DNA from: Fonticula alba ATCC 38817
Taxonomy: Eukaryota > Protista > Nucleariida
Length of the DNA stretch: 22,179 bases
Strand: one strand, 5' to 3'
Assembly: GCA_000388065.2 (NCBI GenBank)
Contig: KB932207.1
Under the pieces are notes generated by a model. It was not told the origin of the DNA and searched no databases. It saw only the letters and a program-made list of their open reading frames with translations. Below are positions 1 to 17,276 of the stretch, piece after piece. Made by a program: the position numbers and the translations under genes. Position 1 is the stretch's first letter. Each line of letters begins with the position of its first letter.

Positions 1-2358
1 CCCATCTGGAGGCCCGGAGGCGCATGAGCAGATGGGGGGGGGGGGGGCGGGCAGAAGGCCAGCTGCTTCCACCGGGCCCCGGAAGTGGCGTGCGAGCCTG
101 TGGGACTGATCGAAGGGTGTGCGCCCGGCTGGCCGGCGGCCCCACGCTACTTCGTCATGGAGCGATTAGGCGGTTTTGCGGGTCATGCGCCGGCGCGTGG
201 CTGGACCTCCGGGCGGACCCGGCCGGTGGCCGGGTTCGTGCATGAATGCGAGCGATCGATCGGAGCACCGTGCCGTTGGCCGGCCACCGGCACCGGTGCT
301 AATGAGCGGCGTGCACATTGTCTCAGAAGTGCGCCCGGGCCCCCCGTTACAGGAGTTGCGTGCGCGGCGCTACCCGCGCGAGGCTGCGGCTGGCCGAGGG
401 GCCGGCCCTTCCGGCGGGCGCGGTCCCGGGCGCCGAGAGGCGTCCGCCAGCCCGAGCCGGGCGCCGAGAGGCTGGGAGGAAAGGCAAAAAGAAGGCCGCA
501 AAGTTCGGAAGGATTACGTCAACGCATTGCAACCGCCCTCCCCCCCCCCCCGGCCGCCGGCCGCCGGCCGTCGGCTGCCCCCTGGGCTCTCAGCTCGAAC
601 CCCCGGCCGAAGAGCGGCGCCGGCGCACCGCAAAGGGGGGCGGGTTCCCCAAAGGAGGAAGAGCCACGCTGGGCGCGCATGCGCGGCATTAGGACGCTCA
701 TAAGCCCCAGAAGGGCCTGGCCTCTCGCCCTCGCCGCCCCTTACTACCTCCCCCCTCCCCCCCCGGCAGCGGCGCCGGCGGTCCCGGGGCCGGGGCGAAT
801 GTCCCCGGAGGGGAGGGGAGCGAGGGCGGAGGGCCCCATGCGCATGGGCCGCGCGGGGAAAAGCCCCGGGGAACCGGCGCCGGGCTCCTGGGTGGCCCGA
901 GGGGGCGGGGGCGGGGACGGGGGAGGGCCTTCATATGCCCCGGGGCCGGTTGGCGGGGACGCGCCGGCGCCGACGCCGGCAGGAAATCAAGTTGCCAGGC
1001 GCGCCGTGGGCCCATGTGCGCCCGGTGACGCGGATCGCCTGGCGGCCGTGAGCGGAGGACGACGACCGACACGGCGGCGCGGCCCTCGAGCCATGTGTTC
1101 CCTGTTGTACGGCCTTCTGGTGCATGGCCACCCCCCCCCCCCCCCCGGCTGTGGCCAGGCCGGGAGAAAGAACCGCCCGGCGCACCGGCATGGGGTGGAG
1201 GCGCGAGGGACCGGGCGCGAGTCCGGCACTCCTCTGTCCGGGGGGGGGGGGGAGATGCTCGCCCGGCAGACCGGGACCCCCGGTCGGTGTAACCGCCCTG
1301 TAGCCAACCCGCCGGCAATGGAGGAAGACGAACACCGGAGGCGGGTGGCCGGTTGCGCCGGAATAAAAAAGGCCGCCGGCCCGGCGCCCCTGCGCGCCCA
1401 CGAGGCACCCGGCGGGCCGGGGCACCGCAACACAGGCAACCAGCGTGGCCGCCGGCACCGGGTGGCAACCGCACGGGCCCGCTGGTGGCCCCGCACGGGG
1501 CCGCAGGGGACACCGCACCGCGAAGTGCGCCGGCCACCCGCCGGAGGCCCATGATGCCCCATCGCGCCGCGGGGCCAGACCTCGACGCCTGGGCGAACGC
1601 CGGGCGCCTCGGCGGACGAATCGCCGAGGCCGCCGCGCCCCGTTGGGCCGGGACCGCTGTTCGCCTGCCACGGCGCGCCCGATCACGACCTTAGTCATCC
1701 GCCGGCCGGATGCAGTCCGCCGACGGCCGACCCATGCCGCCTTGGTCCCCATCTCCGGACCCCACAGATTGTGGGGGGGCGCCGGTTGTCTTGGGCGGCT
1801 CGCCCCCCCCCCCCCGGCGGCCGGGCCACCCGGCTACCTGCCCTCAATGGGCGCGGGCGGGGGGGGGGGAGGCCCGGCTGGAACGGGCCCGCACACACAC
1901 CTGAGCGATTTTGAATTCAAACGGCCGGGCCGAAATTGCAATTGCCCCGGCCCAATAACCGCCCGCCCGGCCATGCTCGTCGTGCACCGCGGGGCTGGGC
2001 GTTCGCTCGGGCACCGCGGGGGCCATGGGGAGCGGGGGCCGGTGCACGAAGGGGAGAAATATAGCTCGCATTATTTCATCGGCCATTTCCTGCCCTCGCT
2101 CACGGGCTTGCCTGCTCGCCGGCGAGTGGCCCAGCCCCCCTCCCCCCCCTCTCTTGCTCCCTCTCTCGCTCTGTGGTAGTGTCTGTGAGTGGTCTCTGTG
2201 GTCCCTTGGGAAGGGCCCGGCAAAAGGGGGCCCGAAGGCGCGTCTCCCCCGTCCCGCCCCCAGGGGGCGACACCCGCCACCCCGGAAGGGGCACATGCCA
2301 GTGTCCGGGGTATGGGTGTATACACGGCGCGGTCCATCCCCGGCCGCGCCCATTCTTC

Positions 2359-2360
<2 letters not shown>

Positions 2361-2391
<31 letters not shown>

Positions 2392-2543
2392 NNNNNNNNN
2401 NNNNNNNNNNNNNNNNNNNNNNNNNNNNNNNNNNNNNNNNNNNNNNNNNNNNNNNNNNNNNNNNNNNNNNNNNNNNNNNNNNNNNNNNNNNNNNNNNNNN
2501 NNNNNNNNNNNNNNNNNNNNNNNNNNNNNNNNNNNNNNNNNNN

Positions 2544-2573
<30 letters not shown>
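2361..2573. repeat. Poly-C homopolymer runs flanking assembly gap 2392-2543
   Basis: About 30 C on each side of the N run. Confidence 0.95.
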
Positions 2574-2574
<1 letters not shown>

Positions 2575-4448
2575 CCACAGAGGAGAATCCCGGGAAATGC
2601 CCCCGGTACCGGGGACCGCCTCGGACATGCCTTTGGGAGAAACGGCCCGGCACTAGGTCCCCATTCCCCCGCCGGCGCCCAGCCCGCGCGGCGCGCCCCC
2701 ACGCCCATGCAGCGTGCGTGCCAAAGGGAGGCCCTCCAGCTTGCGGTCAGCATGTTATGCCCATCCCCCCCCCCTGCCCAGAGAGAGCGAGTCTCCTGGT
2801 GCGGGGGGAGCTGCGCGGGCAGATGGTCTCAACCTCGAGTCCCTCTGCGCCCGGGCCGGCGGACCCGAGGATCGATGGCCGGCCAAGGGACGGCTTGGCA
2901 CGGCGAACATGGTCGCCAGGCGGGGCCCCGGCGCGCCGCTTGCCGAGGCAGCCTGAGCCCCAGCCAACCCCCGTTGTCGAGGGCGCCCAGGCGTGCGGGA
3001 CCCGAGGCCGGCCGGGGGGGGGGGGGCCCGTCCCCCGCGGCCGAGGAAGCCGCCGACGCCGGAGCCCCCCCCCCCCTTCGTCGGAGAGTGAGAACACCCA
3101 GGCGCCCGGGCCCCCTGGTCCTCCCCATAGAGCCCCCCCTCCTCCCCCCGGCTCTGGGAGAAGAGCCCCCTGATGAGGCAGGCTTCCCCACTCCGGGAAG
3201 GGCGTCCACCCCGGCGCCCCGCCCCCCCGCTCTCCCCTTCGAATGCCGGAAGGATGCGGGCGCATCCTTCCGTCCCCAAGAGGCTTGGTGCTCTCCCTCT
3301 CTCTCTCCCTCCCTCCCTCGCTCCCTCGCTCTTTTCGGGCTCGTAGATACCCTCGGTGGAGGGAGGCACAGAGCAGGGGGGGGGGGCACATCTTTCGGGT
3401 GAGACCACCAAAACCGCGCCTGTGGGAAGCGGGCGTTTTGTCCGTCTGCCACTGTACACGGCGGCCCGGAGCTCGCGATGCCTGGCGTCAGTCACGTCTG
3501 CCCAGGGGCTGGTAGGGCCGGAGGAGGCAACGCAAGGGGAGAGCGCTCTGGCCGGGCAGAGAAAGAGCGAAGCGACTCCCTTGGCCTGCCCCCCCCCCCC
3601 CCCCCCCCCCCCCCCTCTGTCCCTGCCGCCCTTGGCCCAAAGAGGCGCCCCGGTGGAGAGGCCCGTGCGCGGTCCTTTGCCCGGATCCCCCCCAGCGTCT
3701 GGCCTGGGGCGACCGGGCGCACATCGTGCGCTCGGCTGCAGCTAGCCAGTGTCCCTTGTTCAGGCCGACCCGCTGGCGCATGAGCACCTTCCCCCGGCTC
3801 CCCCGTTTCCGAAGGAGGATCCCCCCTCCGGCGTATCGCCCCTGTCGACCGGCCCAAGCAGGCTCGGGCGATGATAAGCGCGCCTCCCGGCCCCCCTCTC
3901 GGTCTGGGACCGGCGGCGTGCTGCAAATCCGGAATCACAATGATGGAATGCACGGAGGCATCCGCGATGGATACACCCGAACGCCGGGCCGCGAGACACG
4001 GCCGAGGGCCTGGACTAGTCACACCCTTACACACCAGCCCATGCGTGATCACATGAAGGAGTACCGAAAGGGCGTGGGGATTTCCCACTCAGGGGAGGCA
4101 CATCCCAACGCCGGGTCTGTGATCATTCGTGATGACCCCCTCGCCGGACCGAGGAGCTTGGACAGAGAATTGGGACATCATACATCACCCGAAGAGTCAC
4201 GCGCAGTCCGTGCCCGGGAAGGGGGCTGCCTGTGGTTTATTTGGGCACCGTTCCGGCAGGCCCGCGCCACACCACCTGCCCGCAGTAGACAGCTCTCCAC
4301 ACCTCCCCTCCTCCCTTTCCCCTCCCTCCCGCTTTCCCTCTCCCTCTCTCTGCCCCCCGCCCCCCTCCTCTCCTTGCCCCCTCTTTTACGGCCACCGCGA
4401 ACTGCCCGCTCTCCCTTCCTGCCGCCGCCGTCGCAGAAGCAGAAGAAG

Positions 4449-5671
4449 ATGACAAAGTACTACTGCGGTGCGTGTCTTCCTGCCACAGTCCATTGGCCAG
4501 GCACCTTTCCCCCCCTGTCCTTCTCTCTGTCTCCCCTTTTGTCCCTTGCCTCGCCCTATCTTTGTCCCTCTCCCTCTCGAGACGCATCGCATGTTGTTGT
4601 CGCTGGTTCCTCGCTCGCGCTCAAGGCTAACTTCCCCCCGTGCGGTGGCGGTCTCCCCTGCCCAGAATACTGCGACATCTCTTTGACGTACGATTCGCCA
4701 TCCGTGCGCAAGTCTCACAACACCGGCTGGAAGCACCGCCAGACCGTCCGGAACTATTACGCCCGTGCGTGTGATCCGCCCCATCCGCCCCATCCGCCCC
4801 ATCTGCCCCCTTTGCACCCTCCCTCACCCTGCCCCGTGCCACAATGGTGTACTGAAACTTGTCGCTCCCCTCGCCCCCCACCTGTGTCCAGGGCTCGTGG
4901 GTCGTCCGGATCTCGTGTGCCATGAGACCGGGCCCCCCAACAGCAGTCGCGCCAAGCGCAACCGTCGCGGTCGTACGGGCTCCCACCTTTCCACTTGCGC
5001 CCCTGGGCTTTCCGCAGATGGCTGACCCTTCCCATTCTCCTGTTCTGCTCCTTGCCTTCCTCTTGCTTCGTGTTCGGTCGCCGACTCCAGCCGACCGTGG
5101 CGATCGTGTACGCACATATCCCCCTCCCAGGGGGCATACACTTTTCATGGCATTCCCTTGCCCTCTCTCCCCCCTCCTCCCTTACCACCGGGGCAATTGC
5201 TAACCTCTTCCCTTGGTATCCACCCATCGCCAATCCCGCCCTCCTTCCCCCCCTTCCCGATCGCCGCCTCTCCAGGGCCGCGGAATGCACTTCGGTGGTG
5301 GTGGTGGCGGCGGCGGCGGCGGCGGTGGCGGCTTCCGTAATGACATGGGCTCCGGCGGTCGTATGATGCCGATGCACGGGATGGGGCCCGGCCCGATGGG
5401 CGACATGCCCCCGCCTGGGGGCCCGTTCATGTTTGGCGGCCCGCCGCCGCCGCACATGGGCGGGATGTTCATGCCGCCGCCGCCGCCGCATGGGTTCCCC
5501 CCGCCGGGGCCACCGCCGCCGCACGGGGCCCACGGGCATGACCAGGGCCCGCCGGGGGCCTGGGCCCCTCCTCCGGGAGCTTGGGCCGGTGGGCCGCTGG
5601 CTGCCCCGTCGCAGGGTGCCTTCCCGCCGCCGGCGCTGGCGCCGGCGTCCTCATCGGCGCCGCCCCAGTGA
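4449..5671 (+). CDS. SNRPC: U1 small nuclear ribonucleoprotein C (U1-C), 5 exons: 4449-4467, 4666-4764, 4892-4972, 5091-5107, 5276-5671; 203 aa
   Basis: Spliced translation begins [38 protein letters not shown]. This matches the U1-C matrin-type C2H2 finger (human [30 protein letters not shown], ligands C6/C9/H24/H30). It is followed by a Gly/Pro/Met-rich tail typical of U1-C. All introns are GT-AG, with branch points CTAAC 4627, CTGAC 5022 and CTAAC 5200. Exon lengths sum to 612 nt and end at TGA 5669-5671. Exons 3-4 are less certain than exons 1, 2 and 5. Confidence 0.93.
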
Positions 5672-5953: not shown

Positions 5954-6103
5954 NNNNNNNNNNNNNNNNNNNNNNNNNNNNNNNNNNNNNNNNNNNNNNN
6001 NNNNNNNNNNNNNNNNNNNNNNNNNNNNNNNNNNNNNNNNNNNNNNNNNNNNNNNNNNNNNNNNNNNNNNNNNNNNNNNNNNNNNNNNNNNNNNNNNNNN
6101 NNN
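5954..6103. other. Assembly gap (150 N) expected to hide the kinase C-terminal exon(s)
   Basis: N run located just downstream of the last kinase donor (6248) and its branch point (6174-6179). Confidence 0.9.
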
Positions 6104-6148
<45 letters not shown>

Positions 6149-6173
6149 GCGTGCGGTGTGTGCGTGCGTGCGT
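6104..6173. repeat. (TG)n/(CA)n microsatellite in the last visible kinase intron, abutting an assembly gap
   Basis: Direct reading. It lies immediately downstream (on the - strand) of the branch point GCTAAC at 6179-6174. Confidence 0.95.
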
Positions 6174-6248
6174 GTTAGCAAGGCTTGCTTGTTTCTTCCC
6201 CCTGTAACTTTGCGAATAATGGCAAGCCCGCCAAAGAGCCCCACGCAC

Positions 6249-7387
6249 CGACATAGGCTGGCGTGCCGACGACGCTGGTCAGGAAAGCCGCCCGGCCGGC
6301 GCCGTTGCCAACCACATTGGCGAAGCCGAAGTCCGCGATCTTCAGCCGCCAGAGGCCACCCTCCTTGGAAAGGAGCAGGTTCTCCGGCTTCAAGTCGCGG
6401 TGGATGACCCCGCGATCGTGGAGATGCTTGACAGCCACGGCCAGCTGGTGGAAGAGGAACCGCGCCTCATCCTCGGCCAGGGCACCCTTCTTCTCGACAT
6501 GCTCCAGAAGATCGCCACCGGGGACGCTGTTTTTTTTTTGTTGTTGTTTTTTCCCCCGTAGGAGGGACAATGCCAGGGAGATATTAGTACACAGGCGGCA
6601 AGGTGGCCACCCCCCCCCCCCCCCCGCCGCAAGATTGCCTTCTTCCCCACTCCCCCTGTCTGGCTGACTTTCCTGCCCTCGCCCCCATGACGACATGCCA
6701 ATGTGGGGCACGTACAGTTCCATGAACATGTAGATGGAGTCCTGGTCGTCGAACACCGCGTGAAGGAGAACAATGCCAGGCTGGAGAGCAGGAAAGGACA
6801 GCCGAGGGGTCAGCCTGCGAGAAGCCCAAATGGCGAGAGGTGGCAAGAGGGAAGAAGGGGGCCACCACTTCCCCGGTGGCATTCTTCCCTCCGGAGCACG
6901 TACATGGCGGACACCACCGAGGATCTCGATCTCCCGCTGGAGCTGACGCATGCTGGTCATAGAGCGCTTGCTCCGGCCGCGGCCCCAGAAGCGCCGCTTG
7001 TCCACAATCTTGACCGCGAGGTTGGTCTTGGTCGGGATGTGCCGAGCCAGCTTGACCACGCCAAATTGACCACTGCATGTGGCATGGGCGTGTCACGCGC
7101 ACGCATGGATTTCCACACCACCGCCACGGCACGCGATGGCAGCATCAGCGGCGACAGTGACATTCAGGCAGACGAAGGAAGCCACGGGGGGAGGGGGGGG
7201 ATGCCGAGAGGCCCAACAGGGGTTTCCGTGTGAGTCGACGAAGGGGCGAGCGACAGGGAGAAGGGGGGAGAAAGGGAGGGAAGAACCAAAACACCCCCCC
7301 CCCCCCGGCCAAAGGGCGGCCCCCAGCCCAAGTGCCCAGCACGCAAGTCACATACCTGCCCAAGATGACCGAGTGGTTGATCTCATA
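6249..7387 (-). other. Protein kinase domain, subdomains I-VIII (part of the giant CDS)
   Basis: Spliced sequence: YEINHSVILGSGQFGVVKLARHIPTKTNLAVKIVDK...QLQREIEIL..VRHPGIVLL...IYMFMELVPGGDLL...HLHDRGVIHRDLKPENLLL...LKIADFGFA...SVVGTPAYV. The Gly-loop, VAIK-equivalent Lys, alphaC Glu, HRD and DFG are all intact. Confidence 0.95.
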
Positions 7388-10300
7388 GTCTGACATGGAC
7401 TGGCCCAGGAGACGCTGCACGTCGGACTCGCCGGTTGCATTGGCCGCGGGCGCGGGCGCGGGCGCGGGCGGGGGCGGCCCGGCCGGCAGATCCCCCAGCG
7501 GGTCCATGCCATGCCGCGGGGACCCAGGCAGCGAAACCCCCTGGCCGCCGGGGGTGGCGGCCTGCGGCGGCGGCGGCGGGGACTGATAGTGTCCTGGGCC
7601 GTGGGCCAGCATGTGCGCCGGAGCCGAGGCCGGGTGATGGTGCGACGGAAGGTGCATGGCCATGCGTGGTGGCGGGGCCCCGGCCGTGGCCATGGCATGT
7701 GGCCCATACTGGTGGGGATGGTGATAGTGACCGGGCGCAACGCCGCTCGGGGGCCCGCCTCCTGCCACGAGGTAGGGATGGTTGCCACCGACGCCCGGGC
7801 CCGGGGAAGCCAGTGACGAGATGCTTGACATGGTGCTGCTGCGGGTCAGGCCGCTGGCGGCCCCGGGGGCCGGCGGCACATGCGGCGTCGCATTCAGCAA
7901 GGCGCTCATGTTCGTGCCGGGGATCGACAGGCCGGACATTTCCATGGTCGGGTAGGTGGGCGAGTAGCCGCCGGCGGCGGCCGCAGCCGCGACAACCGCC
8001 GCGGCCGTCACCGTCCCCGGAAGGGACTCCGTGGACCCGGTCCCGGGGGTCATGCCGCCGGTGAAGCGCCCCTGCATCATCAGCATATGGGGAGGGATCT
8101 GCCCGGCGGCGGCGGCGGCAGCCACCGCGGCGGGTGTGGCAGGCTGCCCGGGTGCCGGCATGCCGGCTGGGGCATAGTGCGCCCCGCCAGGGAAGTTCCC
8201 CGGCCCGGGGAGGGTCCCGGCCGGGGCCATCGGTCCGCCGATATGCGGCCCGGGGAGGGTCCCCGTGGCGGCCGGCATCGGCCCGCCGAGCCCACCCGGC
8301 CCGGGGAGGGTCCCCGTGCCACAGGAGGGCCCGGGAAGGGTCCCGGTCGAGGAGGGGCAAGCCGCACGCCCGGGCAGCGTCTCGGTGCCGGCCCCCAGGG
8401 TGTGGACATTCTTCATGCCGGGGCTGTGGCCGGGGCCGGTCCCCCGCGGCAGCATGTCCGTCATCAGGGGATACGGATGCGTCTGCGAGTGCATATGCGG
8501 CCCCGAGCGGCTGGGATAGGGCGAGGGCGCGGCCAGGTGGTGCTGCTGCGGTTGCTGGTGGTGCTGAAGATAGTGCTGGTGCGGCTGGTACTGGTGCTGC
8601 TGGTGCGGGGACACCGGGCTCTCGACCGAGCCGTGCGCCCGGCCATACATGTTACCAAGCTGCTTGTTTTTTTTTTTTTTTTTTTTTTTTCATTTCGGCC
8701 GGGCCGGTGAGCGAGGGGGAGGGAGATGCACGATGTCTGTCAGTGGGCGAGGCGCGGTCACACCGGCGGTCCACCAAGAGGGGGACGGACACAGGGCAAG
8801 CATATGCACACATGTGCATGCACAACAATGCGTACCTCCGACAGGGGAGACAGGTCGGAGCCCATCGGGGCGCCGGACCGCGGTAGGAGCCCCGGACTGC
8901 CAGCCCCAGAGCAGGGGGTGGTGATGGGCTGAGGCAGGGGGATGGCGCTGTGGCCGCTGGGGCTGGTGCTGCCGGCGCCGGTGGTGGGCACTGCTCGCGG
9001 GGACTGCGGCCGGTGGGGGGACGCATGGCCGCTGCCGGTGCCGCCGTGCGAGGAACTGGGCGACTGGGCATGGGGCGAGGTGCCGCCGCTGCCGCCCAGG
9101 GACGCCAGGCGCGGGGAGCTCGGTGAGGCCGAATTGCCGGAGGGCTTGCGCTCGAGCGACCCCTGCGCCTGCGGGTGATGCTGATGCGGCAGCTGGCTGT
9201 TGGTCGACAGGTGGAGGTGCTGCACCAGGGACGACCCGCTGTTGGTGCGGATTAGGGTGAAGCGCTCTGGGGTCTCGTCGCCCGGAGGCAGCAGGGGGTC
9301 CACATAGTCATTGATGGACGAGGCATTGGACCCACCGCGCGATACGCCGGGCAGAGTGCCCGCCTGGGGCAGAGGCATGTCGCGAAGCTCCTCCTCGGAG
9401 CCCAGTCGCGAGAGGAGGGCCTGCGTGGTGGGAGCCTTCGAGGCATGGGGCCCAGCGCTGGCATCTATTCCGGCAGGCGGCGGCGTGGGGGGGGGGGGGG
9501 GGGGAGGGGAAAGGCATGGTCGCAAGGTGTGCGTGCGAGATGCAAGGAGGGCTTGTCAGCATGCAGGGGACCACCCGAGAGCCAGATGCATGGGCGCCAA
9601 CAACAGCAGCAGCAGCAACATCCGCGGCGGGGGTGGTGGCGGTGGCGGTGGCGGTGGCGGTGGCGGTGCTGGCGTGGCCAATGAAGCAAGCGGAGGGCGG
9701 CCCAAAGGATGGGGGTTTGCGTACCAGGACTGCCGGGCCCGGAGGCCAGAGAGCCGGCTGCCTGCTCGGAGCTGGCTTGTTCGGTGAGCTTGGCCATGCG
9801 ACCGACCGAGGGAGCGGCGGCGGGGCCATCCACAGCGGCCGAGCTGTCATACTCGACCAGCCGATTGGATGCCGCGGCGACGGCCATCCGGCGCATTTGG
9901 GCCGCCGAGTCGGCGTAACACCGGTGCAGAGCCGAGTCGACGGACTTCCGCCGGGGGGGCTGGTGCTGGGCCGCATCCGGGCTCAAGTCGGCAAAGGCCT
10001 CGGACCGGGGCCCGGAATCGTACAGGGTCGACCCGCCGACCGGCAGGTTGACCGTGCTGACCAGGGCCTGGCGCATGCATTCCACATCGTGCAGGCCGGC
10101 GCCGGCGCCGGCGCCACCGGCCGGGGTGGAGGAGGCCGATCCGCCGATGCCGCCCTCCTGCGAGGAGCACCGCGAGGTGTACTGCTGGGACTGCTGCGCC
10201 CCGGCCATGCAGGAACTGTCCTGCAGCCGCGGGGACGCATGCTCCGGGGCCCGGCTCGGCCGTGGCGGCAGGGAGGGATTGTTCATGAGGTCCAGCCCGC

Positions 10301-11371
10301 GCTCGCGCCCGGGGGTCAGGACCAGCCCGTTGCCGGGGTACTCGTCCTTCGGCGAGCGAGTAAAGTGCGACTGGTGCGCGGTGTGCATTTCGCCGGCATC
10401 ATGGAAGAAGGACGCGGGCGCGGTGAAGGTCAATGACTGGGACCCGCCATTGCCGTAGGCCCCGGCCGGGCCATCGACCAGGGGGTTGGACAGGCAGGCC
10501 GGCAGGGCCGGCGACCCGGCCGCCGGCGACCGAACCGGGCCACCCCCGAGGGGAATGAAGTTGGCGATGGAGGGCGGCAGCTCCGGGCCCGGGGTGGGGT
10601 GCTTTGCGCCGGCCGCCGTGGCCACTGCGGCCAGCGAGGAGGCCGACTGTGACCGGCCGCCACTGGCCAGATGCCCGGCAGACGACCCGCCCAGGGCCCC
10701 GACGTGGGGCGACGAGCCGGCCGCCTGGGCCGCCGCCGCCGCCGCGGCCAGTGCCGCAAACCCCGGCGCCTGGCCCGGGAGATTCCCACTGGAGGCAGAG
10801 CCGCTGGATGGCCGCTGCCAGGTGGGCGACAGGACCGGCACCGAGCGGTCGATCGCCGACACGGCACTGGCGCCATTGGGCCCGGGGCCCATGAAGGGCG
10901 ATGCCGTGGCCCCGCCACCGGCCCCAGCCACCACCAGGGAGGGCATGGATTGCGAGTGGCCCGAGTGCGCCGGCGACTGCAGCGACATAACCTGCGGGTG
11001 GGAGAGGGACCCGCCATTGGAATGGTGCCCCGGGGGAGCATAGTGGCCCGGCAAGCCGGAGGAGGGGGAATAGTAGCCGGGGATGTTGGCCGTGGCACTG
11101 GGAGCAGGCCCGGCACCGTTGAGGCCCGGGTGCACGGCACCGCCGGTGCCATTGGCTGCGGAGGCCGCCGCGGCGGCGGCCGCCGCCGCCGCCAGGAACC
11201 CCGATGACCCGCCACTCCAGGTGTAACTGCTACCATGGAGATTGGCGCCGGCCAGGACCCCGGCGGCTGGCGGCGAGCCCGGCATCAGGTGCGGCGAGTC
11301 GGACCCGGTACCGGCCAAGTGTGCCAGGGCATCATTGGAGCTGACAAAGTAGGCATGCCCCAGGGAGGCTG

Positions 11372-11412
<41 letters not shown>

Positions 11413-12856
11413 TGCAGGGCGGCCAGGTGGGCTGAGTCTAGGAGATGGTGCTGCGGGTGGAAGCGCAAGCCGCCTCCCCCGGCGGCGGTGGCCGCCGCCA
11501 CGGCCAGGTGCTGGAAGTGGGCCTGCTGCGCGGCCTGCAGGTGGTGGGACGGCAGCATGTGGTGTTCGGTCGGATGCATGCCGGCGAAATGATGGGGCGA
11601 AAGGAGGGGCCCCCCGGCGGCGGCGGTGGAGGTGGCCATGCCGCCAGGCCCGGAGCGCTGCTGCATCTGCTGGTGCATTTGCTGCTGATACTGGGCCGCC
11701 TGCTGCTGGTGAAGCTGCTGCATCTGGAGCTGATGCATCTGCGCCTGCTGCTGCTGCTGCTGCTGCTGTTGGAGTTGCTGCTGTTGGAAGTGCTGGAGCT
11801 GCGCATGGGCCTGGGCCTGGGGATCGTTCAAGGCGGTGGGGCCCTCTGTGCTGGAGAGGGCAAACTCGGCCTCCTGTACATAGAGGGTCTCCTCGCCGGA
11901 GGCCGGGGCCAAGAAGGGCTGATTGGTGTTTTTCTGCAAGGGGGAGGCCTGCTGCGGCTGCTTCGGGGGAACGTGCTCGATCAGCTCATCGTCCAGGCGG
12001 CGAACCAGATCATTGTCCGGGAAGGAGCTGAGACGCTTGTGGCCGGCCTTCACCGATTGCAGGGAATCCCCATCGACCATGCCGTGAAAGCCGTGGTGAT
12101 GGGAGGGGTGGTGATGTGGGTGACAATGGCCAACCAGGCTCCCCTCGCTCGAGCTCCGTGCCGAGCCCGCACCCGGGGGGTGGATCTGTTTGTGTTTGTG
12201 TGTGTGTGTGGGTGTGGGTGGGTGCAGGCGCACATGCACAGGCAGGTTGTGCGAGGAGGGAGAGGGGGCAATGTCAGCAAGATGGGTTGGAGGGGGTGAC
12301 ACAAAAATGAGGAAGCCCACGACGGGCAATCACGTACATCCACCACGGCCTCGGTCTCGGAGCCGGGGCTGGCCACCAGGCCGGCGGTGTCGCGGGCGGA
12401 GTTCTCGCGCGACACGCGTGCCGTCACCGCGCCGGACATGGCCTCAGTGTTTGGCGTTGAGGCGGCCGCCGGCGACGGGCTGCCATAGTGGTGCCCGGGG
12501 GAGGGAGTCGTCACCACGGTCTTCGGGGACTTTCCGCCGGAGAGGAAGCTGGCAAAGAGACCGGGGCGCTTTTCGGCCACACTGCCACCCGCGGAGCCGG
12601 CCGGGCCCCCGGCCCCGGGAGACTGGAGCCCACCGCCGGAAGTGGCGTAGCCCACCTCCCCCGGGGAGGGGGCTTGCGAGCGACCAGGCATGTCGCCCGA
12701 GGCGGAGGCCTGTTCGAAGGTCTCCCCCGAGGCGGCACTCACTGACTTGCTGGTGGTCATGCCGAGGCGCGAGGCGGCCTTGATGCCGGTTTTGCCTGCC
12801 GGCCCGGAGGCCGCGGCGGCCGTGGTGGGGGAATTGGCCTGGCTGTTGCTGGCACT

Positions 12857-12890
<34 letters not shown>

Positions 12891-15800
12891 CTGCTGCTGC
12901 TGCTGCTGCTGCTCCCGCCACCGATGCCCAAGAAGCGACTGATGCTATTGCTGCGCAGGCGCAACTTGGCCCCGGCACTGGTCTTGGGCGGCTCGGACTT
13001 GACGCCGGGCGTGGGACTGGTGGTGGTGGCGGTGGCCGCCAGGCTGGCCACGAGGCCGGCCGACGGGCCGGATGCACTGCCAGGCCCCGGGTCAGACAGG
13101 CCGGACGGCGCACGAAGCGGCCCGGCCGGAGCTGCCCGATGACCGGCGGTGGCTCCCCCCCCGGGGAGGGTGCCAAGCCCACTGGCTCCTCCCGGGCCGG
13201 TGCCGATGCCGATGCCGGTGCCGGTGCCGGTGCCGGTGCCGGTGCCGGTGCTGATGGCGCTGGCGGCCCAGGCGCCCGGCAGGTCGCGCTGGACCCCGGC
13301 AAAGGGGTCCTCCAGTTCGTCGGTGGTGTCGGTCGCCTCGGCCAGGGAGTAGAGCCCGCGCACGGACACCGAGGTGGTCCCCTGCATGAAGCAGGCCACC
13401 AGGGTGGACTCCTCACTGTCGGTGGTCGACTCGACCGAGGTGTCCACGCGAGGGCTGGCCGATGCGGCATGCGGGTAAATGCCATCCAGCAGCTCGCTCG
13501 TGGTGGGATGCTCCATGTTCACCAGGGAGCCTGCATCCGAATGGCAGGGCGCCGGCAGCGCCTGCTGGTAGAACATCGAGGGGGAGCAACGCTGCGGCAT
13601 GTCCAGCAGCCCGGCCGGCGGAGCCAGGGGCGGAGCCGTGGCCGGACGGAAGGGCGGCGACCCGGGGCACCGGTCGGAAGATGCGACAATCTCCGGCCCG
13701 GTCGAGTGGGCCTTCGTCAGGAAGAGGTCCCCCGGCCCGATGACAGGACCGGCCAGACCGCCAGAGCACAGAGCCAGCCGGGAGTCACTGCCCGCGCGGA
13801 CTTCCCGCGGTGCCCGGTTCAGGTAGGGGGACGAGCCGGACTCCAGGCCCGGTCCCCCTGCAGGGGCAGCAAGGGGCGACTCGCTCCCGGTGCCAGGGGC
13901 AATTTGCGACAGCCCCGGCAGGTCATCCGTCGAATCTGCATGCACAGGCCCCGGGCCAAGGGGGGAACTGCCCCGGCGCCCGGGATGGGCCTGGATGTTG
14001 CCGATGGCGGTGCCACTGCCGCCGCCGCCGCCGCCGCCGTTGTTGTTGTTGTTGCTGCTGTTGTTGTGGCTGCCGAGGCGCCCGCCAGCCGCGAGTTCGT
14101 CAATGGGCGATGAGAAGCCGGCCGGGCGACCGACCGTCGAGACGGCCCCCGCCGCGGCTGCTTGGTCGTCCGGCGTCCAGGCCAGAGTAGGCAGCCAGCG
14201 AGCAGCGGCGGCGGCGGCAGCGGCGGTGGTGGTGCCAGCCCCCATGGGACCCGGCGAGCCGGACCCGGACGATGGGTCCAGTGGCCGTGCCGGCCCGGGG
14301 ACTGGGCTTGGGGCTCCGCTGGAATCGCTGCTAGACGAATGGGAGGAAGATGACGAGGAGGAGGAGGAGGAGGAGGAGGAGGACAAGTTCGAGCGCGATC
14401 GGGCCAACAAATCCGGCCGATCGAGGGATGCCTTGCTCGGGGTTCGACTGGTCAGGGTGAGTGGCTCCCAGCCGGATGATTGCCGGGACAGCATCCAGCC
14501 CGTGGTGCCGGGCAGAGTGCCTGCCCCGGACACGCCCGGCCCCCCGCCGGCGGTGGTTGTGGTGTTGAGGACACTGGCATTGGAGGGGCCGCCGGGCCCG
14601 GCGCCGGCCGGGGCACATGGCGGGAAGGAGGCCGGCTTGCCGGCGGATCCGAGCCCGGCCGGCGGTGCCAGACCGCCAGTGGTCTCCATGTCGGCAGGGG
14701 CATCGCCCAGAGCCCCGGCCGGTGGGCCGATGGCATCGGCCCAGCCCATGCCCGGGCCCAAGCCTCCGGCTGTGGCGTCACAGGGGCCCGAGTCCTCGCC
14801 TGCCACCACTGAGCCCTGCAGCTGGATCATGCGCAGGGTGGCCGGGATGGAAACCGTCGGCATGGCGGTCAGCAGGGCCTCCGGGGCGCCGACGGCCAGT
14901 GTCGTGCGGATCAATGCGTTGAGGTAGATATTTTCCCGGGGCCGCTGTGCGACAGGGCAGCAATCGGGGATGAAGGCGTGCGTGAGTAAGGACCACCGGG
15001 AGTCGGGCCCAGGACAGCCGGCATGGTGCCAAGCCTGCCTTGCTGCCCTCCAAGTGCCGGAGAGCGTGGGAACCAAATGGGTTTGCGTTTGTGCATGTGT
15101 GTGTGTGTGTGTGTGTGTGAAAGGGAGAGGGAGACATGGAGGACGGCCGGGCCCATACCTCAAAATGGTGCGGAGGCAGGCGAATCAAACGCGTAAAGCG
15201 GATGGCCGTCGAATTCCGGTGGCCCCGATAGTTGGATGGCGGGGCGTCCTCGGGCGAAGTGTCCTCCCCGAGGCTGCTATTCCGCGAGAGGTCATTCCGC
15301 TTGCGGGGAAGGTCGTGATCGGCGAAGCTGGCCACCGACTCCTTGCTTGGATGGTCGGATCCCGCCAGGAAGAGCGATGTTGCCGAGAGGCTGGAGTCGG
15401 AATTGAGGCCGCCGGCCCCGGTCGAGCAGGAGGCCGTGGCTGTCCGGCCGCCGATGCCCGAGGCACCGGCCGAGGCAGTCGGCGTAGTGGCTGCCCTCCC
15501 GCCGGCTATATCGGCCAGACGGAGTCAGGGCCGGAGGGGAGGGAGAGGGGGGGGGGAGCACATGTTAGAGGGAGGGCAACGGCGAGGCAGGAGGGCGGAG
15601 AGCGGCGGCGTGCTCCCGGCGAAGAGTCAAGCTGGATGGCAGATGCAGGATGAGCTGGCGCAGAAAGCAACCATACCAAAGGCGCCAGACGAAGAGCAGG
15701 GGGGAAGCTTCTGCGAGCAGCTCACATGGACGCGGATTTTGCAGGCTGTTGATGTTTGTCCGTTGTTGTTGTGGGTTTTTTTTCCGCACCCCCCGCCAGT

Positions 15801-17276
15801 GGTTAGATTCTTGTCCGAGAGACAGACACATGACAAAAGCAGCAGCAGCAGCAGCAGCAGCAGCGGGCACGAGGCAGGAAGTGGGAAACATACTTTGGCA
15901 TTTGTAGCCGGTTCGCTTGAGACTGAACATGGAAGTGGAGCAGACCTCGCAACTGGACCCGCCTGGCAGAGGATTGTTCCTGTTGGTGTTGTTGTCCGTG
16001 TTTTTTTTTCCCCCATCCCCCCAGGTGACGGTGGTCAGCGGCACGCATGGACTCTTGGTCGCGCATTTGCCTGGAATCCGCGCCCCGGTCCATTGCTCTT
16101 GCCCGGGCCTGTGCCTGGGCCCCTTCGCCCATCCGTGGTCGGGTCCTATGATCCCCGCCCCCCTTCGCCCCCCCCCCCCCCCCCCCGGCCAACACGTGGG
16201 GACTTCAATTCTTTCTCGCAAACACGCTTATACAGCAAGAACCTGGCACCCACTCTGGCGCCCTCGTGTGTGTGTGTGGTACACAGAGAAGGGGAAAGCC
16301 ACCGCGACGAAGGGCATGCGTACCGCACAGGGACCAGCAAGTGTCCAAAGAGGGCCAATGGCGGCTCGGACGAGGCAGCTCCCCCGCCGAAGGGAAGCAT
16401 CGAGGCGGAGCTCGATGCGCGCGGCCGGCGCCGCTTCGGCGACTTGGTCTTCTGTGACTGCGAGCGCGACAGGGCACCCTCAGAGGAGGTGTAGTCGACG
16501 GACTCTGAAGCAGGGGGGAGATATGCCCAACAGAGAGAGAGAGAAGCCAGGGAGTGTAAGTAGGTACCCCGACCAAAGGAAGTGCGCAGGCCTGAGACGT
16601 GCAGGTGTGGGGGCGGAGGGGACGAGGGCAGGGACACAGGCAGGGCACAGGAGGCCAGCGCACCAGTGAGCGACGGCAGGTCATCCTGCTCCGGATTGGC
16701 ATACGGGCCACTGGACCCGAAGGAGGTGACACTCGAGGAGGCGGAGGGGGATTGGCAGAAGCAGACCATGTGCTGGTTGCGCATCGGCACACAGTGGGGA
16801 TGGTAGCTCTTGAAGCAATCTGTCACAAGCATATGGGCGTCAGCAGCTGCAGAAGGGCATGCCCGAAGGTCAAGGAGTTGAGGCGAGGCGAGGCGGGGAA
16901 AGGCTCGCGCGAGGGGAGGAAGCGCGGCCAGGATGCCGAGCGTACTATTGCAGGACATGGCCTGGCGATCGGACGGGGCAAAGGGGATCCGGCACGCGGC
17001 GCAGGTCGTGGCCGTGGGAGCCAGGCGCTCGGAGAAGGTCCCGGGAGAATTGCTCTGGGCCCCCTGGTACAGGTGGTATATTGATGATCCTTCGAAGGGG
17101 CTGGTGCTGGGGGCGGCGTGCGGTGCCACGACCGAGGGCACATCGCCGGCATCGGTGCCCATCCGCAGGGGGCTCGAGCTGGGGGATACCGGGGAGGTGG
17201 GCGCACTGGCGGCCGGGGTTTGGCCTCGGCGTGCGACCGGGGCCCTGGGGAGGTCGGAGCAGGGGCCGTTTGTCAT
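6249..17276 (-). CDS. Giant C1-C1-linker-kinase protein (PKD-like CAMK-group Ser/Thr kinase), 3'-partial, >=2894 aa. Exons: 17276-16946, 16819-16664, 16504-16324, 15979-15894, 15745-15677, 15505-15159, 14944-12338, 12185-9725, 9464-8836, 8659-7356, 7072-6904, 6780-6716, 6526-6249
   Basis: The 13 exons join through GT-AG introns whose phases are all mutually consistent (1,1,2,1,1,0,0,1,0,2,0,2,1; total 8683 nt). Splicing reconstitutes two Cys/His fingers and kinase subdomains I-VIII. The start codon is tentative because an upstream acceptor exists at 17316. The end is missing in the gap at 5954-6103. Confidence 0.85.
8204..8383 (-). repeat. Coding tandem repeat of the TLPG motif (5 copies)
   Basis: The + strand carries cccggggagggtccc at 8204, 8249 and 8300, with variants at 8330 and 8369. 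Protein: ETLPGR..TGTLPGP..TGTLPGP..TGTLPGP..AGTLPGP. Confidence 0.9.
8667..8690. repeat. T24/A24 homopolymer at the 3' end of kinase intron 9
   Basis: Direct reading. On the sense (-) strand, A24 lies just upstream of the CAG acceptor at 8662-8660. Confidence 0.9.
11373..11414 (-). repeat. Coding CAG repeat, Q14
   Basis: (CTG)n on the + strand, translating to LQQQQQQQQQQQQQQAAS in exon 8. A second Q/H/M-rich block lies at about 11657-11790. Confidence 0.95.
13197..13250 (-). repeat. Coding hexamer repeat encoding (TG)n/(IG)n dipeptides
   Basis: (GTGCCG)n on the + strand; protein STGTGTGTGTGTGIGIGTG. Confidence 0.85.
14320..14383 (-). repeat. Coding poly-Ser tract
   Basis: (GAG)n on the + strand; protein LSSSSSSSSSSSSSHSSSSDSS. 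Confidence 0.9.
15696..16343 (-). other. C1 (phorbol ester/DAG-binding-type) zinc finger, split over three exons
   Basis: Spliced sequence HLLVPVRNNPLPGGSSCEVCSTSMFSLKRTGYKCQTCKIRVHVSCSQKLPPC gives H-x15-C-x2-C-x13-C-x2-C-x4-H-x2-C-x6-C. The canonical C1 pattern is H-x12-C-x2-C-x13/14-C-x2-C-x4-H-x2-C-x7-C. Confidence 0.88.
16755..17075 (-). other. First Cys/His finger, C1-like (PHD-like is the alternative reading)
   Basis: After removing intron 16945-16820: H-x23-CAAC-RIPFAPSDRQAMS-CNNC-FKSY-H-PH-C-VPMRNQHMV-CFC. The core C-x2-C-x13-C-x2-C-x4-H-x2-C spacing is shared by C1 and PHD fingers. Confidence 0.7.

What the first reader, a model, noticed from the sequence alone, without database searches (positions are those of the whole stretch)
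6249..17276. A ~3000-aa protein kinase D-like architecture (C1-C1...CAMK kinase) in an apparently non-animal genome
Seen: splicing yields two N-terminal C1-type fingers and a C-terminal CAMK-group kinase carrying LGSGQFGVV, DKRRF, HPGIVLL and SVVGTPAY. Known: tandem C1 domains plus a CAMK-group kinase with LGSGQFG and RSVVGTPAY define the PKD/PRKD family, which is about 900 aa and characterised mainly in animals; yeasts lack it. Inferred: this is a PKD-related kinase about three times normal size in a GC-rich protist with fungal-like branch points. It could inform how old DAG/PKD-type signalling architecture is. Neither finger is visible in the raw ORF track.
Basis: partly seen in the sequence, partly recalled or inferred. 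Interest (0 to 1): 0.75.

Follow-up and report, generated by a model that had tools for sequence, protein, structure and literature searches.

The report
Giant PKD-like kinase in a fungal relative
A non-animal, GC-rich protist (probably the fungal relative Fonticula alba) carries a very long gene whose kinase part belongs to the protein kinase D family known mainly from animals, which suggests the family is older than animals; the gene's end is lost in an assembly gap and no transcript evidence was available.

Summary
The observation largely holds. On the minus strand, 17276 to 6249, 13 open exons are joined by 12 canonical introns (11 start GTAYG, all end YAG). They give 2926 codons.

- **Kinase:** all four quoted kinase motifs are present. 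The kinase stops after the activation loop. Its C-lobe is missing, lost in or beyond the N run at 5954-6103.
- **Finger 2:** it matches the two halves of Pfam C1_1, split exactly by an intron.
- **Finger 1:** it has only C1-like Cys/His spacing and no HMM hit.
- **Middle:** about 2330 residues are low-complexity sequence with no detectable domain. No PH or ubiquitin-like domain was found.

**Phylogeny (IQ-TREE, 69 kinase domains):**
- The kinase groups with three metagenomic relatives (99/95), one of which has C1 plus kinase.
- That group joins a set of C1-bearing, PH-less kinases that includes one from the fungus Olpidium (98/92).
- That larger group joins all named PKDs, including Capsaspora (100/100).
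- AU tests reject a clade with CHK2 (p 0.009) or with CAMK1/4 (p 6e-6).

So this is a PKD-clade kinase with a non-canonical architecture in a non-animal genome. I did not show that the C1 exons and kinase exons lie on one transcript. I did not search the joined protein; searches were exon by exon. The organism name comes from an earlier scan note and is untested here.

The parts
16946..17276 (-). Exon 1: ATG at 17276; holds the first part of finger 1 (17075-16947)
   Evidence: First ATG of the open frame; GC3 0.82; donor GTACGC at 16945
16568..16819 (-). Exon 2: second part of finger 1 (16817-16761)
   Evidence: Acceptor CAG, phase 1 preserved, completes C-x2-C-x4-H-x2-C-x9-C. No Pfam hit
16324..16504 (-). 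Exon 3: basic/Ser-rich stretch, ends with the His of finger 2 (16343-16326)
15894..15979 (-). Exon 4: first half of finger 2 (a C1 domain)
   Evidence: Pfam C1_1 model positions 11-32, E 0.015. Best hit of my own C1 HMM in the window, iE 0.0015
15677..15745 (-). Exon 5: second half of finger 2
   Evidence: Pfam C1_1 model positions 34-51, E 0.009
15159..15505 (-). Exon 6: no recognised domain
   Evidence: Open, GC3 0.78; no Pfam hit
12338..14944 (-). Exon 7: 869 codons, low complexity (poly-Ser, Gly, Ala, Thr runs)
   Evidence: Open frame, GC3 0.83, 68% A/G/S/P/Q/T/H; no Pfam domain
9725..12185 (-). Exon 8: 820 codons, low complexity (poly-Gln, poly-Ala, His-rich)
   Evidence: Open frame, GC3 0.85; no Pfam domain
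8836..9464 (-). Exon 9: 209 codons, Ser/Pro-rich
7356..8659 (-). Exon 10: 434 codons of low complexity; its end (7387-7356) starts the kinase domain and the glycine loop
6904..7072 (-). Exon 11: kinase N-lobe (glycine loop, beta-3 Lys, DKRRF, alpha-C Glu)
   Evidence: 53% identical to P0001 residues 72-129
6716..6780 (-). Exon 12: kinase N-lobe strands (PGIVLL...)
6249..6526 (-). Exon 13: hinge, HRDLKPEN, DFGFA and activation loop to GTPAYV; ends at a phase-1 GTGCGT donor
   Evidence: Pfam Pkinase 8.9e-31 on the enclosing frame; 73% identical to P0001 residues 151-239
5954..6248 (-). Start of the last visible intron (branch-like TGCTAAC, then a (CA)n run) followed by the 150-base N run; the acceptor and the kinase C-lobe exon(s) are not assembled

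Best explanation
This is one long, 13-plus-exon gene of a non-animal opisthokont, probably Fonticula alba. It encodes a protein of at least 2926 residues.

From N to C the protein has:
- a C1-like zinc finger;
- a genuine but atypical C1 domain;
- about 2450 residues of low-complexity, probably disordered sequence;
- a serine/threonine kinase domain of the protein kinase D clade of the CAMK group.

Shown here: the exon structure, one C1 domain, the PKD-clade position of the kinase, and the visible catalytic residues (beta-3 Lys, alpha-C Glu, HRD, Asn, DFG).

Inferred: the protein works like a PKD. The fingers would hold it at a membrane or partner. The kinase would be switched on through the conserved activation-loop serine just before VVGTPAY. 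The enormous linker is lineage-specific GC-driven expansion rather than added function.

The gene and its PH-less relatives suggest that a C1-plus-PKD-type-kinase protein existed before Holozoa and Holomycota split.
For: **Gene structure**
- The long open frames on the minus strand run 869, 820, 209 and 434 codons in about 70% GC DNA. Codon-phase GC follows these frames.
- All 12 introns are phase-consistent. Eleven start GTAYG and all end YAG.

**Domains**
- Pkinase scores 8.9e-31.
- C1_1 is hit in two collinear halves, on exons 4 and 5.

**Relatives**
- The closest proteins among 1.84 billion representatives are P0001, at 64% identity, and its 72%-identical relative P0155, which has C1_1 plus Pkinase.
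- The best named hits of P0001 are all protein kinase D, at 260-267 bits. Against solved structures, CHK2 scores 227, DCLK1 204 and CAMK1D 203 bits.

**Trees**
- FastTree, 344 rows: the window sits inside an 89-row clade (99) that holds all 26 PKD-named proteins.
- IQ-TREE, careful: support is 99/95, 98/92 and 100/100 for the three nested clades.
- AU tests reject a CHK2 clade and a CAMK1/4 clade.

**Signature motifs**
- GxGQFG, DFGFA and S[IV]VGTPxY occur in 19 of 19 PKD rows and in the window. They occur in none of the CHK2 or CAMK1/4 rows.

**Own genome**
- No other kinase piece tested from this genome enters the PKD clade.
Against: - No RNA evidence, so a single transcript is inferred only from contiguity and splice signals.
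- The kinase C-lobe is absent from the window and was not found elsewhere, so an intact kinase is assumed rather than shown.
- Pfam finds no PH domain or PKD ubiquitin-like domain in any exon.
- Finger 1 has no HMM support.
- By eye, both fingers lack the Pro, Gly and Gln consensus of DAG-binding C1 domains. DAG regulation is therefore doubtful.
- The tree rests on about 160 alignable residues for the window itself.
- DCLK references were not included.
- The spliced protein was never scored as a whole.
Confidence: 0.72

Rival explanations
1. Two or more neighbouring same-strand genes have been read as one. In this view a C1-finger or low-complexity protein and a separate PKD-like kinase are not joined in any transcript.
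For: There is no transcript evidence. The relatives P0155, P0035 and P0125 have their C1 within 100-200 residues of the kinase, not about 2600 residues away. The protein databases returned no self-hit that could show an annotated model.
Against: Every junction between the long exons has a GTAYG donor, a YAG acceptor and a compatible phase, with introns of 152-283 nt. Coding periodicity is continuous from 17.3 kb to 6.25 kb. No stretch is left over for a terminator plus promoter.
Confidence: 0.15
2. The architecture is convergent. In this view the kinase is a CHK2/Rad53-like or CAMK1-like CAMK kinase that gained zinc fingers independently of PKD.
For: CHK2 is the best solved-structure match of the relative P0001, at 227 bits. 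The window shares with CHK2 an insert between beta-3 and alpha-C and the HRD (not HCD) motif; this is my reading.
Against: The PKD clade has 100/100 support. AU tests reject the CHK2 clade (p 0.009) and the CAMK1/4 clade (p 6e-6). PKD fragments outscore CHK2 by about 40 bits. No FHA domain is found in any exon. The genome's own CHK2-like kinase lies elsewhere, on C14. HRD is also the state in Capsaspora PKD.
Confidence: 0.04
3. The kinase is truly truncated after the activation loop. In this view the locus is a decaying gene or encodes a non-catalytic fragment, and nothing is hidden in the gap.
For: The N run is only 150 bases, too short for about 100 residues plus a 3' UTR. The sequence beyond it shows no kinase match. 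No C-lobe of matching identity exists elsewhere in the assembly.
Against: Exon 13 ends at a good GTGCGT donor in phase 1. This is the same intron position as in the genome's CaMKI-like gene. A branch-like TGCTAAC follows, with no AG before the gap. All visible catalytic residues are intact, and GC3 of 0.76-0.83 shows no decay. The N run is flanked by a (CA)n repeat, as expected for an assembly break.
Confidence: 0.09

Closest known systems
Protein kinase D (PRKD1-3 of animals; CAMK/PKD of Capsaspora owczarzaki, KJE91895.1 = P0116)
   Same: The kinase domain is in the same clade with 100/100 support. It shares the GxGQFG glycine loop, DFGFA and the S-V-V-G-T-P-A-Y activation segment with its conserved serine. 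C1-type zinc fingers lie N-terminal to the kinase.
   Different: No PH domain and no N-terminal ubiquitin-like domain are detected, whereas Capsaspora PKD has C1 x3, PH and a weak ULD hit. It has HRD rather than the animal HCD. It is about three times longer because of roughly 2330 low-complexity residues. The fingers lack the usual DAG-contact consensus.
Unnamed C1(x1-3)+kinase proteins from metagenomes and Olpidium bornovanus (P0001, P0155, P0009; P0162, P0035, P0071, P0090, P0094, P0125)
   Same: These are the nearest relatives. The window is 64% identical to P0001 in the visible kinase, and clade support is 99/95 and 98/92. They are C1 plus kinase without PH. They share the insert after DK+RF/W.
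   Different: They are 336-813 residues long, with the last C1 100-200 residues from the kinase. The window's protein separates them by about 2600 residues. Only the Olpidium row has a taxon name; the rest are environmental sequences.
CHK2/Rad53/Cds1 checkpoint kinases
   Same: This is the second-closest kinase family by score. It has HRD and a similar beta-3/alpha-C insert.
   Different: CHK2 kinases carry FHA, not C1. They form a separate clade (95/68), and the AU test rejects union with this gene's clade.

Membership tests
Protein kinase D (CAMK/PKD) | Kinase domain falls in the PKD clade of the CAMK group | tested here: met
   IQ-TREE careful: 100/100 for PKD plus this clade. AU tests reject CHK2 and CAMK1/4 alternatives. 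FastTree with 344 rows agrees.
Protein kinase D (CAMK/PKD) | PKD signature motifs: GxGQFG loop, DFGFA, S[IV]VGTPxY activation segment | tested here: met
   Present in the window, with GSGQFG across one splice. Found in 19 of 19 PKD rows and 0 of 14 CHK2 and CAMK1/4 rows.
Protein kinase D (CAMK/PKD) | Tandem C1 domains N-terminal to the kinase | tested here: inconclusive
   Finger 2: C1_1 halves on exons 4 and 5 (E 0.015 and 0.009, model positions 11-32 and 34-51). Finger 1: C1-like spacing only, no HMM hit. The joined fingers were not scored.
Protein kinase D (CAMK/PKD) | PH domain between C1b and the kinase | tested here: not met
   Pfam finds no PH at E 0.01 or better on the long open frames and E 10 or better on exons 1-6. 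The nearest relatives also lack it.
Protein kinase D (CAMK/PKD) | N-terminal ubiquitin-like dimerisation domain next to C1a (PF25525; Elsner et al. 2019, PMC6768651) | tested here: not met
   No Pfam hit on exon 1 at E 10 or better. The model is short and divergent, so absence is only weakly shown.
Protein kinase D (CAMK/PKD) | Complete, catalytically competent kinase domain | tested here: inconclusive
   Lys, Glu, HRD, Asn and DFG are present. APE and subdomains IX-XI are not in the window and presumably lie in the gap at 5954-6103.
Protein kinase D (CAMK/PKD) | DAG/phorbol-ester binding by the C1 domains | not testable with these tools
   By eye, the fingers lack the Pro/Gly/Gln consensus of typical C1 domains (my knowledge of C1 consensus). 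This needs a binding assay.
CHK2/Rad53 | FHA domain plus a kinase in the CHK2 clade | tested here: not met
   No FHA in any exon. The kinase lies outside the CHK2 clade (AU p 0.009).
CAMK1/CAMK4 | Kinase in the CAMK1/4 clade | tested here: not met
   AU p 6e-6. The genome's CaMKI-like C-lobe lies on another contig.

The most novel reading that the evidence does not exclude
A C1-plus-PKD-type-kinase protein predates the split of Holozoa and Holomycota. Its ancestral form lacked the PH and ubiquitin-like domains. It survives in nucleariids, Olpidium and several uncultured lineages and was lost in Dikarya. If so, PKC is not the only C1-bearing kinase lineage on the fungal side.
Probability: 0.55. 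Interest if true: 0.6.

Novelty: new variant of a known kind. Interest (0 to 1): 0.5.

Why it matters
PKD is usually described as an animal kinase (Elsner et al. 2019, PMC6768651). [quoted passage not shown]

A PKD-clade kinase with C1 fingers in a nucleariid-type genome challenges that picture. So does the PH-less sister group, which includes an early-diverging fungus. Together they would move the origin of the C1-plus-PKD-kinase combination back to the opisthokont ancestor. They also suggest that the PH and ubiquitin-like domains were added later on the animal side.

The gene is also a clear example of how far low-complexity expansion can stretch a signalling protein in a very GC-rich genome.

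This is a point about evolutionary distribution, not a new mechanism. It rests on an incomplete assembly.

Tried and rejected
- **Pfam C1_1 over the whole genome in six frames** gave no hit in the window, because both fingers are split by introns. Exon-wise Pfam was needed.
- **The partial kinase against solved structures** was not discriminating.
- **Looking for an annotated self-protein:** the representative search and a word search with a same-genome kinase returned no 100% hit. I could not see any official gene model or confirm the organism's name.
- **Searching for the missing C-lobe:** nothing was found in the window. The best C-lobe-only hit in the genome, C1:2005216-2005506 at 51%, turned out to be CaMKI-like by its motifs and sits next to another N run. 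I rejected it as the missing half.
- **Pfam on ten top-ranked representative hits** showed mostly tandem-kinase proteins and was uninformative.
- **A possible third half-finger** at 19188-19129 lies in sequence without coding periodicity and was rejected as chance.
- **A word search with P0125** found only environmental relatives. It was limited to 8000 candidates, so it says nothing about absence from named fungi.
- **The Atlas look-up** gave only generic C1-plus-kinase clusters.
- **Literature searches** found no paper describing PKD in Fonticula or fungi.
Full report
**Where and what**

The window is G000:C7:1453807-1475985 of a 31.3-Mb, 214-contig assembly. It is about 70% GC and has four N runs. 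I could not confirm that. The protein databases returned no self-hits for this genome. The genome size, GC content and short introns show only that it is a small non-animal eukaryote. The feature lies on the minus strand.

**Checking the observation**

Three motifs are in the raw frame: DKRRF, HRDLKPEN and SVVGTPAY. LGSGQFGVV and HPGIVLL each need one splice.

I read 13 exons (see the parts list) joined by 12 introns of 63-344 nt.
- Eleven introns start GTAYG and all end YAG.
- All phases are compatible.
- The exons sum to 8779 nt, which is 2926 codons.
- There are no stops, and GC3 is 0.68-0.86.
- Codon-phase GC follows the same frames along the whole span.
- Frames of 869 and 820 codons cannot be chance in DNA where a stop is expected roughly every 50 codons.

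Upstream of the ATG at 17276 there is no coding periodicity.

**The fingers**

Finger 2 is spliced from exons 3, 4 and 5.
- Its spacing is H-x15-C-x2-C-x13-C-x2-C-x4-H-x2-C-x6-C.
- Exon 4 alone hits Pfam C1_1 model positions 11-32 (E 0.015, 15.5 bits).
- Exon 5 alone hits positions 34-51 (E 0.009, 16.3 bits).
- The two halves are collinear and adjacent. Their rough sum of 31.8 bits exceeds the 26.5-bit cut-off.
- A C1 HMM that I built from 16 C1 domains of the fetched relatives ranks exon 4 first among 367 six-frame pieces of the window.

Finger 1 spans exons 1 and 2.
- Its spacing is H-x23-C-x2-C-x13-C-x2-C-x4-H-x2-C-x9-C.
- It has no HMM support.
- It is C1-like by pattern only. The first fingers of the sister proteins are similarly divergent.

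By eye, neither finger has the usual DAG-contact consensus. I did not submit the joined fingers or the joined protein to any tool. All searches were exon by exon, by reference, as the scan's rule requires.

**The middle**

Exons 7-10 cover 2332 codons. They are 68-73% A/G/S/P/Q/T/H, with poly-Ser, poly-Gln and poly-Ala runs. They have no Pfam domain. No PH, FHA or PKD ubiquitin-like domain was found anywhere in the gene.

**The kinase**

Pfam Pkinase scores 8.9e-31. The beta-3 Lys, alpha-C Glu, HRD, Asn and DFG are all present.

Exon 13 ends at GTPAYV with a phase-1 GTGCGT donor at 6248. A TGCTAAC follows, then a (CA)n run with no AG, then the N run at 6103-5954.

No C-lobe is present anywhere in the window. 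On the plus strand, a U1C-like gene (zf-U1) converges on the same gap. The missing exons must therefore lie in an under-sized assembly gap, or the gene is truncated.

The only C-lobe-only hit elsewhere in the genome (C1:2005216-2005506) is CaMKI-like. It sits beside another N run. It shares the same intron position and phase, but it is not the missing half.

**Relatives**

Among 1.84 billion representatives, the best hit is P0001, a 336-aa metagenomic protein with 64% identity. In the window's own genome, P0001 matches exon 13 at 73% and exon 11 at 53%. That is well above its identity to any other kinase stretch of this genome (51% at most).

P0155 is 72% identical to P0001 and carries C1_1 plus Pkinase, with no PH.

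P0001's best named hits are all protein kinase D, at 260-267 bits. Against solved structures, CHK2 scores 227, DCLK1 204 and CAMK1D 203 bits.

**Trees**

A FastTree of 344 kinase domains puts the window in an 89-row clade (support 99). That clade holds all 26 PKD-named proteins and none of the CaMKI-named ones.

A careful IQ-TREE was run on 69 rows under LG+C20+F+G4 PMSF. It included named references for CHK2, CAMK1/4, PhK, MARK/AMPK, CDPK and the MSK C-terminal domain, all taken. It gives three nested clades:
- window + P0001 + P0155 + P0009, support 99/95;
- plus the Olpidium P0162 and the C1-bearing P0035, P0071, P0090, P0094 and P0125, support 98/92;
- plus all 19 PKD rows including Capsaspora, support 100/100.

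CHK2 forms its own clade (95/68). Forcing this gene's clade together with CHK2 costs 41.5 log-likelihood units (AU p 0.009). Forcing it with CAMK1/4 costs 98.5 units (AU p 6e-6).

The motifs GxGQFG, DFGFA and S[IV]VGTPxY separate PKD plus this clade from all other groups. HCD is an animal-only state; Capsaspora and this clade keep HRD.

Other kinase pieces of the same genome stay outside the PKD clade. One of them (C14) groups with CHK2.

For the window's row in the alignment, I masked the intron-derived residues with X rather than joining the exons.

**Reading**

This is a PKD-clade kinase with a non-canonical architecture. It has C1-type fingers, no PH or ubiquitin-like domain, and a huge disordered spacer. 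It lies in a non-animal opisthokont.

How it works is inferred by analogy with PKD. The fingers would anchor or regulate the protein. The conserved serine before VVGTPAY would be the activation site. Whether the fingers bind DAG is open.

**Comparison with the literature**

The papers I could find treat PKD as an animal or holozoan kinase (PMC6768651). [quoted passage not shown] I found none that describes PKD in Fonticula or fungi. That is a limited library search, not proof of novelty. The public annotation of this genome may already label the gene as a CAMK kinase.

**Verdict**

This is a new variant of a known kind, of moderate interest. The main open points are the transcript structure, the missing C-lobe and the nature of finger 1.

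Noticed in passing
window 3726-4925 (+), zf-U1 at about 4665-4760, tail running towards 5.9 kb: A U1C-like gene (Pfam zf-U1, E 7e-11) with a Pro/Gly/Met-rich tail lies tail-to-tail with the kinase gene. This leaves little room for the kinase's missing 3' exons outside the gap.
   Followed up: partly
G000:C1:2005216-2005506 (+) = L021 3217-3507; N run at L021 2242-3142: A CaMKI-like kinase C-lobe starts right after a 901-base N run. Its exon begins in phase 1 inside the Ala codon of APE. This is the same intron position and phase as the donor after window exon 13, so the intron appears conserved between CAMK paralogues.
   Followed up: partly
L007 = G000:C14:197556-201134 (kinase at C14:199056-200128): This kinase piece groups with FHA-bearing CHK2 kinases in a FastTree, although its best word-search hits were MSK/RSK C-terminal domains. 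It is probably the genome's own CHK2-like or related CAMK kinase.
   Followed up: partly
window about 15140-15095, 12220-12190, 6160-6104 (minus strand): (CA)n microsatellites lie inside three introns of the gene. The last one abuts the N run and probably caused the assembly break.
   Followed up: no
L019 (ENA metagenome scaffold, 24 kb), gene at 2293-4476: P0090, a C1-C1-kinase member of the sister clade, sits among closely packed, apparently intron-less genes (RhoGAP-PH, PP2C, F-box). This points to a compact-genome eukaryote of unknown identity.
   Followed up: no
G000:C16:194249-196139 (-): Three C1_1 hits lie within 2 kb on one strand (E 5.7e-7, 0.006 and 0.48). This is another multi-C1 gene in the genome (possibly PKC-like). 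It was not examined.
   Followed up: no
window 19188-19129 (-): A C1-like half motif (C-x2-C-x4-H-x2-C) scored iE 0.05 with my C1 HMM. It lies in sequence without coding periodicity and is probably chance.
   Followed up: partly
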